From positions 62,001 to 126,000 of IMG/VR virus record IMGVR_UViG_3300031957_002643: 64,000 bases of DNA; one strand, 5' to 3'. Shown piece by piece: positions 2,328 to 61,860 of the stretch. A program made the position numbers and the translations under genes. Every line of letters starts with the position of its first letter. Position 1 is the first letter of the stretch. The notes under the pieces were generated by a model that saw only the letters and a program-made list of their open reading frames with translations, had not been told where the DNA came from and searched no databases.

Positions 2328-2404
2328 TGGCGACCTCGGCAGGACTCGAACCTGCAATCTTCGGATTAGAAGTCCGCTGCATCATCCAGTTATGCTACGA
2401 GGCC
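2328..2404 (-). tRNA. tRNA-Arg (anticodon TCT)
   Basis: GGCCTCG/CGAGGTC acceptor stem, anticodon loop CTTCTAA, T-arm GGTTCGAGTCC, encoded CCA. Confidence 0.93.
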
Positions 2405-2630: not shown

Positions 2631-2707
2631 TGGCACCCCCAGAAGGATTCGAACCTCCGACACGCAGGGTAGAAACCTGCTGCTCTTCCGGGCTGAGCTA
2701 TGGGGGC
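2631..2707 (-). tRNA. tRNA-Arg (anticodon TCT) with atypical loop
   Basis: GCCCCCA/TGGGGGT acceptor stem, anticodon arm GCAGG-TTTCTAC-CCTGC, GGTTCGAATCC, encoded CCA. Confidence 0.88.
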
Positions 2708-49719: not shown

Positions 49720-49751
49720 GAAGAAATGAGTACTCTAGTATAAATAGATTC

Positions 49752-50270
49752 ATGGATAGCCAACTCACCAAGCCAGCGCTTCACAATGTATTATATGACA
49801 TTCCAAGGTTTGTCGTAGGTGCACCCGGATCGCAACACAGATCGTCTAATGGCGATATGAAGCTTCATGCTGGAATTGCACAGCCACTAGATTTTCGTTT
49901 TATGACTAAGGACGGTGTTCCTTTGAATCTAACGAATTTTGATCTCTATTTGATCTTCTGGACTAATAATCGTTTCGATATGGATTATGGTCCTAATGGT
50001 TATACCCTTGATAACATTGATGATATTTCATTGCGCAAATCTCTGGATTTGATTGAAGCCTATGAGGGATCAGCTTCGACTCTTTTGACAAATGAAGATA
50101 CCGAGAAGCTTGCACGTGATGCCCGCAACAATTCTATGCGTTGGGGGTTGTTCATGGTTAACAGTGACAAGCAGGTATTTGCCATGTCTGTTACTCAAAC
50201 TGGTGATGTTTCTGGCAGCGTGATCATTAATACTGGTGATGTTCCTCCATACGAAATGATTATTGGATAA
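49752..50270 (+). CDS. late hypothetical protein, possibly structural
   Basis: TATAAATA-N5-ATG; beta-rich. Confidence 0.7.
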   Translation: MDSQLTKPALHNVLYDIPRFVVGAPGSQHRSSNGDMKLHAGIAQPLDFRFMTKDGVPLNLTNFDLYLIFWTNNRFDMDYGPNGYTLDNIDDISLRKSLDLIEAYEGSASTLLTNEDTEKLARDARNNSMRWGLFMVNSDKQVFAMSVTQTGDVSGSVIINTGDVPPYEMIIG

Positions 50271-56689: not shown

Positions 56690-56727
56690 ATTACGGGAGA
56701 GACCAATAAGCCTCTCCCGTAATTTTT
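56690..56727. terminator. hairpin between the gp32-like and uvsX genes
   Basis: ATTACGGGAGAG...CTCTCCCGTAAT. Confidence 0.55.
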
Positions 56728-57841: not shown

Positions 57842-59602
57842 TCAGGTAAGAATTGGCATTGGTGCTTCTTCGTAATCATCTTCGTCGTAATACTCTTCTT
57901 CGGTGACATTCATGATGCTGAACTGAATAGCATCATCAATATCTTCTTCATAGTATTTGAGTTCTTCTAATAGATGGCACATCAATACACAGGCCATAAC
58001 TCGGTCATCTTTTTGGCCCGGCTTGGCCTCATATCCCTTACCTCGCTTGACGAAATTTTTGAGTTCAGTGATCAACCCACGTGATCTTGGAATGAAAACA
58101 TTGCGCTCAATATATGCTTTCAGCCTAATAGCATAATCTCGTTTGGACGGATTAGTTGTTCGTATACCTCTAGACTTGTTGCCATCACTATCAACAAGAT
58201 AACCCGGAATGTTTTCTTCGCCCTCATAAATCAAGATGTTCAAAACACCTTGCCCGACGCCATTACATTCAACAGAATAATAGATAAGACTTTCACCAAT
58301 ATGATCTGGTAGAGCCTGTTGTTCATCATCGATAAACTTTAGAATCCTGACAAGCTGTTTTGCTTGTTCAACCATATCAACTTCATTAGCAGCCCATTCG
58401 GCAACTTGAATCATGTCTGGTAATGAAAATACCTGAATACATGCATTATCGCCGCCCACACCTTCAGCCGGATCAAGGATCACGCCATAAATCGTATTAG
58501 ATTGAATTCTCTCGTACCAGATAGTTTTGTGTCTATCGACATAAACTGGTTTCTTTGCATATGCATTTAACGAGAGAAGCTTTCCTGCATCGATCAGAGT
58601 TTCGTCACCAGAGACAAAACGGCATTCAAATTCTCGGTACCATTCGTCCATGGTAGTACCTTCAGCCAATGTTTTCCTTTTGAAATCATCATTACGATCT
58701 GGATGTTCCTTCCAATGCACAAAGAATCGACGGAAACCAGCTTCTACCCCACCATCGTCTTTGTGTTCGGACTCTGCATATCCAAGACGACTCATTTCTA
58801 ATTGGTAATCATTCTTGGCTTGTTCATTTTCGAATAAGGTTTCGTAATTTCCCTTTTTGGAAGCTAATGCTCTTGGATCGATCCCCATTTCATCCAGAAG
58901 ATCATCTTTCCATGCAAATGAGTTTGCGGCATCTTCAGCTTTGAACCAGATAGATGCAAATTTGTCTTCGTCTGTGTTCGGCGTTGATGTGATAATCATT
59001 TGTCCACCGACAGCAGCAAGTGCTGGTGAAACTGAAGTCCACATTTCTTTTTGAATGTTTGGTTCGACGTATGCAAACTCATCGAGATATAGAATATGAA
59101 TGGATTTACCACGACCAGTACTCTTGGTCGTGTTTTCAGCAATAATACGAGTGCCGTTATCAAATTTGATTTCGTGAACGTTATTGACTGCCAAGCCCGG
59201 TTTCATGAACCATGGACATTCAAAATACATCTCTTTAATTTTTTCCATGATCTCTTTTGCCATGTCGCCCTTGTTGGCAGCAATGACAATATTGATCTTT
59301 GGTTGGAAACAAGCCTTCCAAAACAAATATGCCGTGGACGAGGTGGTCTTGCCGGTCTGTCTGGGGAGCATACAAATAACTCTTTTAGAAGAATTATAAT
59401 TATCAAGGAGTCTTTTCTGGAAGTCGAAAGTTTTAAACTTGCCCGGCCCCTTGATCCCTACAATATTGACATAATTTTCAATAAAGTAGTGCATGTCTTT
59501 ACTGCACCGGACTAACTCCATCAACTGATGTGGTGTATAATCTTGTTTATAACCGGCTGGCTTAATTTTGCCGCCATCTTCTTCTGGAATAAATCTTCCC
59601 AT
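57842..59602 (-). CDS. terminase large subunit (T4 gp17-like)
   Basis: PRQTGKT, LYLDEFA, ITSTPN, LDPAEGVGGD, KDDRVM. Confidence 0.95.
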   Translation of the reverse strand: MGRFIPEEDGGKIKPAGYKQDYTPHQLMELVRCSKDMHYFIENYVNIVGIKGPGKFKTFDFQKRLLDNYNSSKRVICMLPRQTGKTTSSTAYLFWKACFQPKINIVIAANKGDMAKEIMEKIKEMYFECPWFMKPGLAVNNVHEIKFDNGTRIIAENTTKSTGRGKSIHILYLDEFAYVEPNIQKEMWTSVSPALAAVGGQMIITSTPNTDEDKFASIWFKAEDAANSFAWKDDLLDEMGIDPRALASKKGNYETLFENEQAKNDYQLEMSRLGYAESEHKDDGGVEAGFRRFFVHWKEHPDRNDDFKRKTLAEGTTMDEWYREFECRFVSGDETLIDAGKLLSLNAYAKKPVYVDRHKTIWYERIQSNTIYGVILDPAEGVGGDNACIQVFSLPDMIQVAEWAANEVDMVEQAKQLVRILKFIDDEQQALPDHIGESLIYYSVECNGVGQGVLNILIYEGEENIPGYLVDSDGNKSRGIRTTNPSKRDYAIRLKAYIERNVFIPRSRGLITELKNFVKRGKGYEAKPGQKDDRVMACVLMCHLLEELKYYEEDIDDAIQFSIMNVTEEEYYDEDDYEEAPMPILT

Positions 59603-59651
59603 TATATTCTACTCACGTATATTACATGAGTATTTACAGTGCTATAGTTAA

Positions 59652-59746
59652 AAATACGCGAAGGGGGCAAGCCATTAAAGGGGAGAGAACGGCTTGCCCC
59701 CTTCTTTTGTCAGAGCGTTCTTAGGGGAGGAACAACACGCTCTGAC
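59652..59746 (-). ncRNA. twin-hairpin anti-SD (cuckoo-like) RNA or terminator
   Basis: 10-bp and 14-bp stems with loops containing TTCCTCCCC and TTCTCTCCCC, followed by TATTTTT. Confidence 0.55.
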
Positions 59747-60177
59747 TATCCTGAGATGTAATCGAAACGGTAAATTGGGTACCCGCTTGACATATTACAG
59801 TATTCAATCATGCGGATCAGTTTGATGCTGTCATCATCGAAATAGATACGCAAAAACTTTTCAAGAGTTTCCGGTGACTCGCGTTCCAGTCCCATTTGTT
59901 TCCGGGGCGGATTGAACCCAGCGGCTTCAGCACTGTCACCATATTTATCATAGTCCCATTGCATCATGCGGTCATGATATGTGGTGGTTTGTCCTTTTGG
60001 ATCACCTTCTGCCTGATACCGGAGAATTGGAGAATACGAATATGGACACTCGTTTCGTAGACGAATTTCTCCCGCTTTGTCCGCATTCTTCGGCGTAATC
60101 GGTGCATCTAGCAAATCCGACCAATAGATATTACCATCAAACATAGCGATTAATCCAGACGGCTCGAATACCGACAT
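59746..60177 (-). CDS. hypothetical protein
   Basis: 143-aa ORF; start possibly MFDGNI. Confidence 0.65.
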   Translation of the reverse strand: MSVFEPSGLIAMFDGNIYWSDLLDAPITPKNADKAGEIRLRNECPYSYSPILRYQAEGDPKGQTTTYHDRMMQWDYDKYGDSAEAAGFNPPRKQMGLERESPETLEKFLRIYFDDDSIKLIRMIEYCNMSSGYPIYRFDYISG

Positions 60178-60575
60178 TCGATATTCATATCAGATTCCTT
60201 GATCACCTTCACGAAGGCGCGACAATACGCTTCCTTGATGTGAACAGACTGAACATTGGCGGCATGACCATGTGGGTTCATATACCACCCCGGCTCGCCG
60301 TACCAGTTGGCACCATACGGAGCATATCCGCTGCGATTGGTGACACCTTCAGCTTCGTTCAAGCGCTTGAAAGAATTGAACAGAGCGCGCTGGCCCGGAT
60401 TGAACTTAACTTCGGCATAGCCGCAAGCCGAATTGTCATCGCCAGCAGCTAGAGCAGCCTGATTGCCAGCTTCGCGTGCAGCAGCGATCAGCGCTTTGAC
60501 CTTGCCGTCGAAGGCCAGCATTTTCGGGTTGTAGGTACGACCCTTAGCAGCTTCACCAGAAATAAAAGTCGGCAT
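60150..60575 (-). CDS. early hypothetical protein
   Basis: MPTFISG after AGGGAGAG; ACGYAEV...QSVHIKEAYCRAF...SRLD. Confidence 0.7.
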   Translation of the reverse strand: MPTFISGEAAKGRTYNPKMLAFDGKVKALIAAAREAGNQAALAAGDDNSACGYAEVKFNPGQRALFNSFKRLNEAEGVTNRSGYAPYGANWYGEPGWYMNPHGHAANVQSVHIKEAYCRAFVKVIKESDMNIECRYSSRLD

Positions 60576-60599
60576 TTGTTCTCTCCCTAAGTTGACTTC

Positions 60600-60628
60600 A
60601 ATATATACGCTCTTTACTTCCGTGTCAA
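60600..60628 (-). promoter_or_regulatory. sigma70-type early promoter
   Basis: TTGACA-17nt-TATATT. Confidence 0.75.
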
Positions 60629-61348: not shown

Positions 61349-61804
61349 CTACGATTGAACCATTCCGAGAACTTGGCATTCCAACCATGCAACATAGTTG
61401 GTTTCGCCAGACTGCTTGAAGCGTTCAACCAGTTCAGCAGTACTCGAATCGACCGGCTTGAGAATGTCCATGACGTTCGTGTAGTTCGGATAGATGGTAT
61501 CCTGCGCCTTGTAGAACCCGGCCTCACGGGCTGTCAAAACAGGCCGACCTTCATTGTCGTAATAGCCGGTGGTTTCGAAACCTTTGTTGAATTCATCGAA
61601 CGGTTCAAAATCCAGTTCGAGTTCATAGTATTCATCTTCGGTGTCACGAAGATCGACCTTCTTAATGCGAACCAGACGAGCACGCATACCAGCTTCGGCA
61701 TAGCATTCCAAATCTTCGGTTTTGAATTCATCATGGAATTCAATATTCTTGCCGACCAGCGCTTGAAGATAATTGCGAATTTCAGAGTTGTCGATCTTGC
61801 TCAT
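61349..61804 (-). CDS. early hypothetical protein
   Basis: 151 aa; GGGAGAG RBS. Confidence 0.7.
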   Translation of the reverse strand: MSKIDNSEIRNYLQALVGKNIEFHDEFKTEDLECYAEAGMRARLVRIKKVDLRDTEDEYYELELDFEPFDEFNKGFETTGYYDNEGRPVLTAREAGFYKAQDTIYPNYTNVMDILKPVDSSTAELVERFKQSGETNYVAWLECQVLGMVQS

Positions 61805-61831
61805 AATGTTCTCTCCCGTTGAACAATAGTG

Positions 61832-61860
61832 TTTATATACGGAAGAAATACATTTGTCAA
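61832..61860 (-). promoter_or_regulatory. sigma70-type early promoter
   Basis: TTGACA-17nt-TATAAA. Confidence 0.75.

What the first reader, a model, noticed from the sequence alone, without database searches (positions are those of the whole stretch)
59652..59746. Twin anti-SD hairpin RNA complementary to the phage's own early RBSs
Seen: two hairpins directly after the 59746 stop, whose minus-strand loops read GTTGTTCCTCCCCTAAGA and GTTCTCTCCCCTTT. GTTCTCTCCC pairs 10/10 with GGGAGAGAAC, the RBS of both promoter-proximal genes (starts 60575 and 61804). Loop 1 pairs 13 Watson-Crick plus 1 GU over 16 nt with CTTAGGGAGAGAACAA at 60575. Known: alphaproteobacterial cuckoo/CcsR-type sRNAs display CCUCC loops and can derive from 3' UTRs. 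Inference: a 3'-UTR sRNA giving negative feedback on early genes, or silencing SD-led host mRNAs while leaderless late mRNAs escape.
Basis: partly seen in the sequence, partly recalled or inferred. Interest (0 to 1): 0.72.

Follow-up and report, generated by a model that had tools for sequence, protein, structure and literature searches.

The report
Conserved twin anti-Shine-Dalgarno hairpins in phage
At the end of an early operon, an uncultivated marine jumbo phage carries two RNA hairpins whose loops are complementary to the ribosome-binding leader of its own early genes; four related phage lineages keep this arrangement, so it probably represses early-gene translation, though this has not been tested.

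Summary
Two hairpins lie at 59709-59746 and 59660-59704 on the minus strand. Their 18- and 17-nt loops are complementary to GGGAGAGAAC, the leader of the promoter-proximal genes at 60575 and 61804.

The element is not a chance match. The same twin hairpin sits between a variable early operon and the TATAAATA late promoter of the large terminase gene in four lineages (TerL 77-83% identical):
- All 24 stem positions pair in all four lineages, and 21 show compensatory changes.
- All eight loops share CUCCCC.
- The early leader GGGAGAGAAC is conserved in three lineages and varies after GGGAGA in the fourth.
- In all four, the minimum-energy fold of the whole operon transcript pairs the 5' leader with the loop of hairpin 1. 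Shuffling the loops abolishes this pairing in 77 of 80 trials.

Best reading (confidence about 0.5): a 3'-UTR anti-SD riboregulator of the phage's own early leader class, acting within the same transcript and/or on other early mRNAs.

It resembles alphaproteobacterial ar14/cuckoo sRNAs, the S. aureus icaR 3'-UTR and the P1 c4 RNA. It is not an Rfam ar14 member (26-29 bits against a threshold of 58.8).

No expression data exist, and the invariant fourth C in the loops is unexplained.

The parts
59709..59746 (-). Hairpin 1. 10-bp stem (59746-59737 with 59718-59709) and 18-nt loop 59736-59719 (GUUGUUCCUCCCCUAAGA). No U tract. Predicted partner of the operon's own 5' leader.
   Evidence: Pairing with the leader in the MFE of the whole transcript.
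59660..59704 (-). Hairpin 2. 14-bp stem (17 bp in the MFE) and 17-nt loop 59690-59674 (GUUCUCUCCCCUUUAAU). Positions 59690-59681 are the exact reverse complement of GGGAGAGAAC.
59650..59659 (-). GCGUAUUUUU tail. The U run starts 5 nt after the stem. Probably an imperfect intrinsic terminator together with hairpin 2.
   Evidence: A similar GUAUUUU follows hairpin 2 in L028. The terminator scan did not call it because the loop exceeds 8 nt.
59746..60177 (-). Last gene of the early operon (143 aa, no family match). Its stop codon abuts hairpin 1. It is not homologous to the genes in the same position in the other lineages.
60150..60575 (-). Promoter-proximal early gene (141 aa, no family match).
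60578..60587 (-). Early leader GGGAGAGAAC (SD plus spacer) of the gene starting at 60575. With its flanks (CUUAGGGAGAGAACAA) it pairs with loop 1.
60600..60628 (-). Sigma-70-type early promoter TTGACA-N17-TATATT (11 of 12 consensus positions).
61808..61817 (-). Early leader GGGAGAGAAC of the gene starting at 61804. It belongs to the repeated cassette CAACGGGAGAGAACAUUAUG.
61832..61860 (-). Sigma-70-type early promoter TTGACA-N17-TATAAA of the repeated promoter-leader cassette. It starts the roughly 2.2-kb early unit that ends at the twin hairpin.
59631..59638 (-). T4-type late-promoter motif TGTAAATA (TATAAATA in the three other lineages), followed by CTC. It marks the start of the late TerL transcript downstream of the hairpins.
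57842..59602 (-). Large terminase subunit, T4 type. The conserved late gene directly downstream, with no SD.

Best explanation
The twin hairpin is a conserved RNA element in the 3' UTR of an early transcription unit. Hairpin 2 plus its U run ends the early transcript and would stabilise its 3' end. Both hairpins display C/U-rich loops with the core CUCCCC. These loops are antisense to the SD plus spacer (GGGAGAGAAC and its flanks) that marks the phage's promoter-proximal early genes.

Proposed mechanism, all inferred. A loop pairs with an early leader, hides the ribosome-binding site and lowers translation of early genes, possibly also marking the duplex for RNase attack. Hairpin 1 would pair mainly with the leader of its own operon, closing the two ends of the mRNA as in icaR. 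The same loops, on the full mRNA or on a processed 3' fragment, could also act on the dozen or so other early mRNAs that carry the same leader. Late genes, which are leaderless or lack an SD, would be untouched. The result would be delayed, self-limiting expression of early genes.

Shown: the structure, its conservation, the complementarity, and the thermodynamic preference for leader-loop pairing. Inferred: transcription through the element, any stable RNA species, and repression itself.
For: 1. Structure. All four versions form two strong hairpins; fold z-scores for the three tested were -6.6 to -9.6.
2. Position. The element always lies between a variable early operon and the TATAAATACTC late promoter of TerL. 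The upstream genes are not homologous between lineages.
3. Stems. 24 of 24 positions pair in all four lineages and 21 show compensatory double changes. The 5' arms are only 20-57% identical between the three lineages compared.
4. Loops. All 8 share CUCCCC. For six loops, 0 of 200,000 shuffles did the same. In 124 kb of one relative, the motif YYCUCCCC occurs only in these two loops.
5. Targets. GGGAGAGAAC leaders follow sigma-70-type promoters in three lineages; the fourth (L028) carries GGGAGAGACC, GGGAGAGAUC and GGGAGAUU. GGGAG-type SDs are almost confined to about 12-15 of about 500 genes, most of them directly behind such a promoter.
6. Energetics. Loop-leader duplexes reach best values of -14 to -22 kcal/mol, with z = -3.2 to -8.4 against shuffled loops.
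7. Whole-transcript folds. The MFE of the full operon transcript pairs the SD region with the hairpin 1 loop in 4 of 4 lineages. Loop shuffles keep that pairing in 3 of 80 cases.
8. Co-variation. In L028 the leader spacer differs (GGGAGAUU) and one loop reads AAUCUCCC. Loop 1 in each lineage also matches flanks specific to a leader in its own genome.
9. Strand. Every copy has the C-rich loop on the strand of the flanking genes. The third copy has two U-G pairs that would be A-C mismatches on the other strand.
10. No RegA or RegB homologue (the T4 proteins that shut off early translation) was found in the complete genome.
Against: - No transcript data: no RNA run was listed and the host is unknown.
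- The fourth C of the invariant CUCCCC has no partner. The leaders read C/A/U-GGGAG, so the conserved core is not fully explained by this target. A protein or another RNA could be the true ligand.
- The cross-genome energy matrix shows no consistent preference for a lineage's own leaders. Two of the six loops score best against their own set, while the window's loops score better against L025 leaders.
- In some MFE folds extra pairs shrink the loop to 6 nt (hairpin 2 of L028, hairpin 1 of L025), which limits access.
- C-rich loops and G-rich SDs pair partly because of composition.
- MFE folds of 1-kb RNAs ignore ribosomes and co-transcriptional folding.
- Only four lineages are available, so co-variation between loop and leader rests on very few events.
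Confidence: 0.5

Rival explanations
1. The element is only a tandem terminator or insulator that keeps early transcription out of the late terminase gene and protects the mRNA 3' end. The conserved CUCCCC loops would then serve another ligand, such as a host or phage RNA-binding protein that prefers C/U-rich single strands (Rho, ribosomal protein S1, or an unknown phage protein), rather than pairing with the leader.
For: The position at the early/late boundary is conserved. Hairpin 2 has a GC-rich stem followed by a U run. The invariant fourth C is not explained by the leader. Large-loop hairpins are common at gene ends in this genome.
Against: Ordinary terminators do not conserve their loops while their stems turn over completely. 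Besides CUCCCC, the loops carry flanks that match the leader spacer (GUUCUC against GAGAAC) and lineage-specific leader flanks. Other large-loop hairpins in the genome lack the motif. A terminator function is in any case compatible with the best explanation.
Confidence: 0.22
2. The RNA is a general anti-SD sRNA aimed at host mRNAs. It would shut off host translation while the phage's SD-less and leaderless late mRNAs keep being translated.
For: Loop 1 of the window and of L047, and one L028 loop, contain the canonical CCUCC. Many late genes look leaderless. About two thirds of crude gene starts lack an SD-like motif.
Against: Six of the eight loops lack CCUCC. They read CUCUCCCC, UUCUCCCC or AAUCUCCCC, which match the phage leader GGGAGAG with its spacer better than AGGAGG. 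The extended complementarity (10 of 10, 13+1 of 16) is to phage-specific sequence. The phage's own early mRNAs would be hit first. The host is unknown, so no target scan was possible.
Confidence: 0.1
3. The feature works at the DNA level. GGGAGAGAAC would be the site of a DNA-binding regulator of early promoters and recur at the terminator, or the loops would be inverted copies of the leader spread by recombination and have no RNA function.
For: A double-stranded DNA site reads the same on either strand. The genome also has promoter cassettes in which an inverted copy of the leader lies in the promoter spacer. The reverse complements of the loops resemble leaders including their flanks.
Against: A DNA site needs no flanking stems, yet both copies in all four lineages sit in the loops of hairpins whose arms covary. 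Unselected copies should have decayed, as the surrounding intergenic DNA has done. Orientation relative to transcription is always the same.
Confidence: 0.08
4. The functional RNA is made from the plus strand, antisense to the operon, and displays SD-like loops (GGGGAGAGAAC, GGGGAGGAAC) that act as ribosome or anti-SD decoys.
For: There are weak plus-strand promoter-like sites at 59596-59648 (9 of 12 consensus positions). On the plus strand hairpin 2 is followed directly by UUCUUUUG.
Against: The promoter matches are weak and lie over the conserved late promoter and TerL start. No plus-strand U tract follows hairpin 2 in L028 or L025. The wobble pairs of the third copy favour the C-rich strand.
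Confidence: 0.03

Closest known systems
Alphaproteobacterial ar14 / cuckoo sRNAs (NfeR1 of Sinorhizobium, CcsR1-4 of Rhodobacter; Rfam RF02344)
   Same: Several hairpins whose stems differ in sequence while each loop shows the same C/U-rich anti-SD motif. The motifs act redundantly by occluding ribosome-binding sites (PMC10746234). ar14 is the best, though sub-threshold, Rfam hit in two lineages.
   Different: The motif is CUCCCC plus leader-specific flanks, not the invariant CCUCCUCCC. There are two hairpins, not three. The element is embedded in an mRNA 3' UTR and no promoter of its own was detected. It is encoded by a lytic-type jumbo phage, and its predicted targets are the phage's own early leaders. 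Scores are 26-29 bits against a gathering score of 58.8.
icaR mRNA of Staphylococcus aureus: 3'-UTR UCCCCUG motif pairing with the SD of the same mRNA
   Same: [quoted passage not shown] Here the MFE of the full operon transcript makes the same kind of 5'-3' contact in all four lineages.
   Different: Here the transcript is a polycistronic phage operon, there are two displayed loops, and the same leader recurs on about a dozen other mRNAs, so action in trans is also possible. Nothing has been tested experimentally.
c4 antisense RNA of phages P1 and P7
   Same: A phage RNA with complementary sequences placed in loops that binds around a ribosome-binding site of a phage mRNA made from the same transcription unit (review PMC12197685).
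   Different: c4 belongs to temperate phages. It lies upstream of its target and controls one antirepressor operon for immunity. There was no Rfam match to it here. The present element is at a 3' end and matches a whole class of early leaders.
T4 RegB endoribonuclease and RegA translational repressor
   Same: The proposed outcome is the same: early mRNAs are shut off through their ribosome-binding sites (RegB cuts GGAG; my own knowledge of T4 biology).
   Different: Those are proteins. No RegA or RegB homologue was found in this genome. Here the proposed agent is RNA.
C-rich-loop sRNAs of Firmicutes (RsaE/RoxS and other UCCC-motif Rsa RNAs)
   Same: Unpaired UCCC/CCCC motifs in hairpin loops target G-rich SD regions (PMC8216469, PMC6158497).
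   Different: Those are chromosomal, independently transcribed sRNAs that regulate metabolism. There is no sequence or Rfam relationship to this element.

Membership tests
Rfam RF02344 ar14 (cuckoo / CcsR / NfeR1) | Covariance-model score at or above the gathering score of 58.8 bits | tested here: not met
   26.1 bits in the window, 28.6 bits in L047 and no hit in L028. There was no hit at the gathering threshold over the whole window.
Rfam RF02344 ar14 (cuckoo / CcsR / NfeR1) | Identical, ultraconserved CCUCCUCCC motif in the unpaired region of each of three hairpins (PMC10746234) | tested here: not met
   There are two hairpins. The shared core is CUCCCC, and no loop contains CCUCCUCCC.
Rfam RF02344 ar14 (cuckoo / CcsR / NfeR1) | Independent sRNA gene with its own promoter in an alphaproteobacterial genome | tested here: inconclusive
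   No strong minus-strand promoter lies upstream of hairpin 1. L025 has a TATAAG 7 nt before hairpin 1 but only a poor -35 (by inspection). The host taxon is unknown.
Intrinsic (Rho-independent) terminator | GC-rich stem, short loop, U tract directly after the stem | tested here: inconclusive
   Hairpin 2 has a 14-17 bp GC-rich stem, but its loop is 11-17 nt and the U run starts 5 nt after the stem. The consensus scan did not report it. Hairpin 1 has no U tract.
3'-UTR-embedded regulator (icaR-type 5'-3' UTR pairing) | A 3'-UTR anti-SD motif complementary to the SD of the same mRNA | tested here: met
   Leader and hairpin 1 loop pair in the MFE of the whole transcript in 4 of 4 lineages. The pairing is lost in 77 of 80 loop shuffles.
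3'-UTR-embedded regulator (icaR-type 5'-3' UTR pairing) | The pairing blocks initiation and/or gives RNase III cleavage in vivo | not testable with these tools
   This needs reporter, toeprint or cleavage assays. No RNA run was listed.
3'-UTR-derived trans-acting sRNA | A stable processed RNA species that shares the mRNA's terminator | not testable with these tools
   The position right after a stop codon and the terminal hairpin with U run fit this class. No transcript data are available.
P1/P7 c4 antisense RNA | Match to the Rfam C4 model | tested here: not met
   No such match at gathering or permissive thresholds.

The most novel reading that the evidence does not exclude
A clade of marine T4-like jumbo phages may replace the protein-based early shut-off of T4 (RegA/RegB) with RNA. 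Every early mRNA would carry a conserved 10-nt leader tag, and a twin-loop anti-SD RNA at the end of an early operon would read that tag. First it would close its own mRNA end to end, giving each transcript a built-in translation timer. Then it would silence the whole early class in trans, while leaderless late mRNAs are exempt.
Probability: 0.3. Interest if true: 0.78.

Novelty: new variant of a known kind. Interest (0 to 1): 0.62.

Why it matters
Riboregulation by lytic phages of their own temporal programme is almost unexplored. Known phage regulatory RNAs come mostly from temperate phages and prophages (review PMC12197685).

This element would be a compact, conserved RNA switch that separates two modes of translation initiation in one virus: early genes led by an SD, and late genes that are leaderless or lack an SD. 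It would also be a phage example of 5'-3' UTR pairing.

The hypothesis can be tested without the unknown host. The promoters, SD and hairpins are of the general bacterial type, so reporters in E. coli with compensatory mutations should work. The leader and loop pair might also serve as an orthogonal translational control part.

Tried and rejected
- blastn of the region against 50,697 phage records gave no match. TerL tblastn found only relatives at 37% identity or less.
- TerL-based loci from IMG/VR (47% identity or less) are not syntenic and have no hairpins upstream of TerL.
- An exact search for loop 2 in IMG/VR returned an unrelated repeat family.
- The promoter-leader pattern in metagenome and viral contigs found only more copies of the L025 lineage.
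- Covariance model R1, built from two sequences, was too sequence-specific. It missed L028 and gave only E = 1.5 for the third copy. I therefore did the structural comparison by hand in a script.
- More distant relatives (L032, L033, L045, L050) lack the twin hairpin, and where early cassettes are present they carry other leaders.
- Antiterminator idea (hairpin 1 loop pairing with the G-rich 5' arm of hairpin 2): possible in the window and in L028 (6 bp) but not in L025, so rejected by inspection.
- An own promoter for an independent sRNA: none is conserved (inspection).
- The plus-strand 43-aa ORF at 59694-59825 (TTG start 3 nt after the SD-like loop): the spacing is too short and relatives have no start codon there, so rejected.
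- RNA evidence: none was listed.
- The 3.2-kb ORF-free region carrying the third copy showed no excess local structure compared with coding controls and no homologues.

Full report
CONTEXT. The window is bases 62,001-126,000 of a single 335,552-bp virus record with direct terminal repeats, rated complete. It was assembled from seawater metagenomes. The phage is a T4-like jumbo phage. Directly downstream of the finding, on the minus strand, lie a T4-type large terminase (57842-59602), a gp32-like single-strand DNA-binding protein and a UvsX-like recombinase. The nearest cultured relatives are PA5oct-like, Atu_ph07-like and Rak2-like jumbo phages, with TerL at most 37% identical. No DNA match exists among 50,697 phage records. 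The host is unknown.

THE OBSERVATION.
- The stop codon of a 143-aa gene (59746-60177, minus strand) runs into hairpin 1 (59746-59709), which has a 10-bp stem and an 18-nt loop.
- Four bases later comes hairpin 2 (59704-59660), with a 14-bp stem (17 bp in the MFE) and a 17-nt loop.
- After hairpin 2 comes GCGUAUUUUU.
- The fold is -49.5 kcal/mol with z = -9.6.
- Positions 59690-59681 of loop 2 are the exact reverse complement of GGGAGAGAAC, the 10-mer three or four bases before the ATGs at 60575 and 61804.
- Loop 1 pairs with the 60575 leader by 13 Watson-Crick pairs and 1 G-U over 16 nt (my recount).
- Both target genes follow near-consensus TTGACA-N17-TATAWW promoters.
- The stretch is identical in the contigs of two sequencing runs.

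THE TARGET IS A CLASS OF LEADERS. There are nine exact copies of GGGAGAGAAC in the genome. Seven are the spaced ribosome-binding site of a gene that directly follows a sigma-70-type promoter. Several of these belong to a repeated promoter-leader cassette ending in CAACGGGAGAGAACAUUAUG. The other two copies are antisense in or beside hairpin loops. With a crude gene call, GGGAG-type SDs precede only 15 of 502 genes, most of them directly behind such a promoter. The 10-mer is therefore a tag of early, promoter-proximal mRNAs.

Late genes look different. The T4 late-promoter motif TATAAATA often lies exactly 5 nt before an ATG, which by T4 rules (my own knowledge) puts the transcript start on the A. 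These genes would be leaderless. The same spacing is kept in relatives. TerL has a 25-30 nt leader without an SD.

COMPARATIVE EVIDENCE. This is what lifts the finding above a curiosity. TerL homologues of 77-83% identity led to syntenic contigs. A search with a small early protein led to one more. Four lineages result:
- the window;
- L025, which is the same lineage as L026, L027 and L036-L038;
- L028;
- L047.

In each lineage a twin hairpin lies between the last early gene and a conserved GTATAAATACTC late promoter in front of TerL.
- The genes upstream of the hairpins are not homologous between lineages, and the intergenic DNA has otherwise diverged.
- The stems have turned over completely. 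The 5' arms are 20-57% identical between the three lineages compared.
- Even so, all 24 stem positions pair in all four lineages, and 21 show changes on both sides.
- All eight loops, by contrast, share CUCCCC. For six loops, 0 of 200,000 composition-preserving shuffles did the same.
- In 124 kb of the L025 lineage, YYCUCCCC occurs only twice on either strand, and both copies are in these loops.
- In the window's genome the motif occurs 10 times against about 21 expected. The only two intergenic copies are the twin loops.
- The early leader GGGAGAGAAC is conserved in three lineages. L028 has the variants GGGAGAGACC, GGGAGAGAUC and GGGAGAUU.

DO LOOPS AND LEADERS FIT? Predicted loop-leader duplexes reach best values of -14 to -22 kcal/mol. 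Each loop binds its own genome's leaders far better than shuffled versions of itself do (z = -3.2 to -8.4, with 0-2 of 200 shuffles as good).

The complementarity extends beyond the SD into the spacer (GUUCUC against GAGAAC) and into lineage-specific flanks:
- CUUAGGG in the window;
- AACAAGGGAG in L028;
- GAGAACACU in L025 and L047.
Where the L028 leader reads GGGAGAUU, one loop reads AAUCUCCC. This looks like co-variation, but it rests on very few events. The cross-genome energy matrix shows no consistent preference for a lineage's own leaders.

I folded the whole operon transcript, from the predicted start at the nearest upstream promoter to the end of hairpin 2 (851-1269 nt). In all four lineages the minimum-energy structure pairs the 5' SD region with the loop of hairpin 1 about 1 kb away, over 9-15 nt. 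Shuffling the loops abolished the contact in 77 of 80 trials. In a two-molecule fold the leader invades hairpin 1, with a net gain of 7-10 kcal/mol.

MECHANISM. The best-supported reading is an anti-SD riboregulator embedded in a 3' UTR.
- Hairpin 2 with its U run ends and stabilises the early transcript.
- Hairpin 1, which is weaker and has no U tract, together with the loop of hairpin 2, presents antisense sequence to the early leader tag.
- Pairing would hide the ribosome-binding site. It could happen in cis, closing the mRNA end to end as shown for S. aureus icaR (PMC3868564). It could happen in trans on the other early mRNAs, as ar14/NfeR1-type sRNAs do with redundant anti-SD loops (PMC10746234).
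- Late mRNAs that are leaderless or lack an SD would escape.
- The genome has no recognisable RegA or RegB. That is consistent with another route to early shut-off but proves nothing.

What is shown: structure, conservation, complementarity and thermodynamic preference. What is inferred: transcription through the element, any processed RNA species, and repression.

WEAK POINTS.
- No RNA run was listed.
- The fourth C of the invariant CUCCCC has no partner in the leader, which reads C, A or U before GGGAG. A protein or a different RNA could therefore be the real ligand.
- Some MFE folds close part of a loop.
- Long-range MFE predictions ignore ribosomes and folding kinetics.
- Rival readings are scored separately: a plain terminator or insulator with protein-binding loops, a host-directed anti-SD RNA, a DNA-level site, and a plus-strand decoy.

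COMPARISON WITH KNOWN SYSTEMS. The scores are 26.1 and 28.6 bits against a gathering score of 58.8, and L028 gives nothing. The defining CCUCCUCCC motif and the third hairpin are also absent. The element therefore works like an ar14 RNA but is not a member of the family. The icaR 3'-UTR UCCCCUG motif is the closest parallel for action in cis. The c4 RNA of P1 and P7 is the closest phage parallel (PMC12197685). I found no description of such an element in a lytic-type jumbo phage in the papers searched. That is a limited search, not proof of absence.

OTHER COPIES.
- A third hairpin with the loop CGUUCUCUCCCCGAUUAAA lies at genome 299,827-299,877 on the plus strand, outside the window, at the end of a 3.2-kb ORF-free stretch.
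- A more distant relative (L033, TerL 53% identical) has one hairpin with a CUUCUCCCCUC loop after its gp32-like gene.
- More distant phages with other early leaders show no such loops in the fragments available.

VERDICT. I class it as a new variant of a known kind of regulator, with interest about 0.6. It remains unproven without expression or reporter data.

Noticed in passing
window 49739-49754 (+); also 23081 (-), 63030 (+); L025 near 19655 (-); L028 near 14614 (-): The T4-type late-promoter motif TATAAATA lies exactly 5 nt (in some cases 4-9 nt) before an ATG. This implies leaderless late mRNAs. The 5-nt spacing before the gene at 49752 is kept in two other lineages, and L032 and L033 have a CTAAATA motif followed by 5 nt and the start codon for TerL itself.
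   Followed up: partly
window 59603-59638 (-): The TerL leader consists of TGTAAATA followed by CTC, a small hairpin (UACUCAUG ... CGUGAGUA) whose 5' arm overlaps the promoter, and no SD. The ACUC...GAGU stem recurs in L025, L028, L029 and L047. A transcript started at the late promoter would lack the 5' arm. The hairpin could therefore form only in early read-through RNA, as with the T4 lysozyme gene (my own knowledge). An AUG-UAA start-stop lies at 59627-59622 in the window only.
   Followed up: partly
G000:C1 161578-161623, 227663-227696, 267989-268020 (outside the window): In some early promoter cassettes a 10-17 bp inverted repeat flanks the -10 box. The promoter spacer carries UUCUCUCCCGUGU and the leader carries ACACGGGAGAGAA. 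Read-through RNA from upstream would therefore hide the SD, while RNA started at the cassette's own promoter would not.
   Followed up: partly
G000:C1 about 296,780-300,030 (locus L034 4780-8030, + strand; outside the window): A 3.2-kb stretch without an ORF of 100 aa or more lies behind two TTGACT-N17-TATATAA promoters. It has about 47% GC and several GGTTCGANTCC motifs that look like tRNA T-arms, and it ends in the third anti-SD hairpin. It gave no Rfam, phage-database or relative match, and its local folding z-scores are no different from those of coding controls.
   Followed up: partly
L025 8962-11686; L028 2652-5402; L030, L031: TerL is intact in the window. In relatives it is interrupted: in L025 it is split into two overlapping ORFs with a faint GIY-YIG hit, and in L028 it is a 916-aa protein with a LAGLIDADG_3 domain, suggesting an intein or homing endonuclease.
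   Followed up: no
window 56690-56723 (-): The hairpin in the intergenic region between the gp32-like and UvsX-like genes is a perfect 12-bp palindrome, AUUACGGGAGAG / CUCUCCCGUAAU. An SD-like and an anti-SD-like sequence thus pair with each other in cis. Relatives have unrelated G-rich/C-rich terminators at this place.
   Followed up: partly
L033 5027-5066 (+): A more distant relative (TerL 53% identical) has a single 12-bp hairpin with the loop CUUCUCCCCUCAACGU after its gp32-like gene. Its early leaders were not on the fragment.
   Followed up: partly
whole genome G000: By a crude gene call, about 63% of the 502 gene starts have no SD-like motif within 20 nt. Some starts are surely miscalled, but SD use appears low for a T4-like phage and may hint at the host.
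   Followed up: no
window 2331-2404 and 2634-2707 (-): Two tRNA genes. Many more tRNA genes elsewhere in the genome sit behind TTGACA-N17-TATAAG promoters.
   Followed up: no
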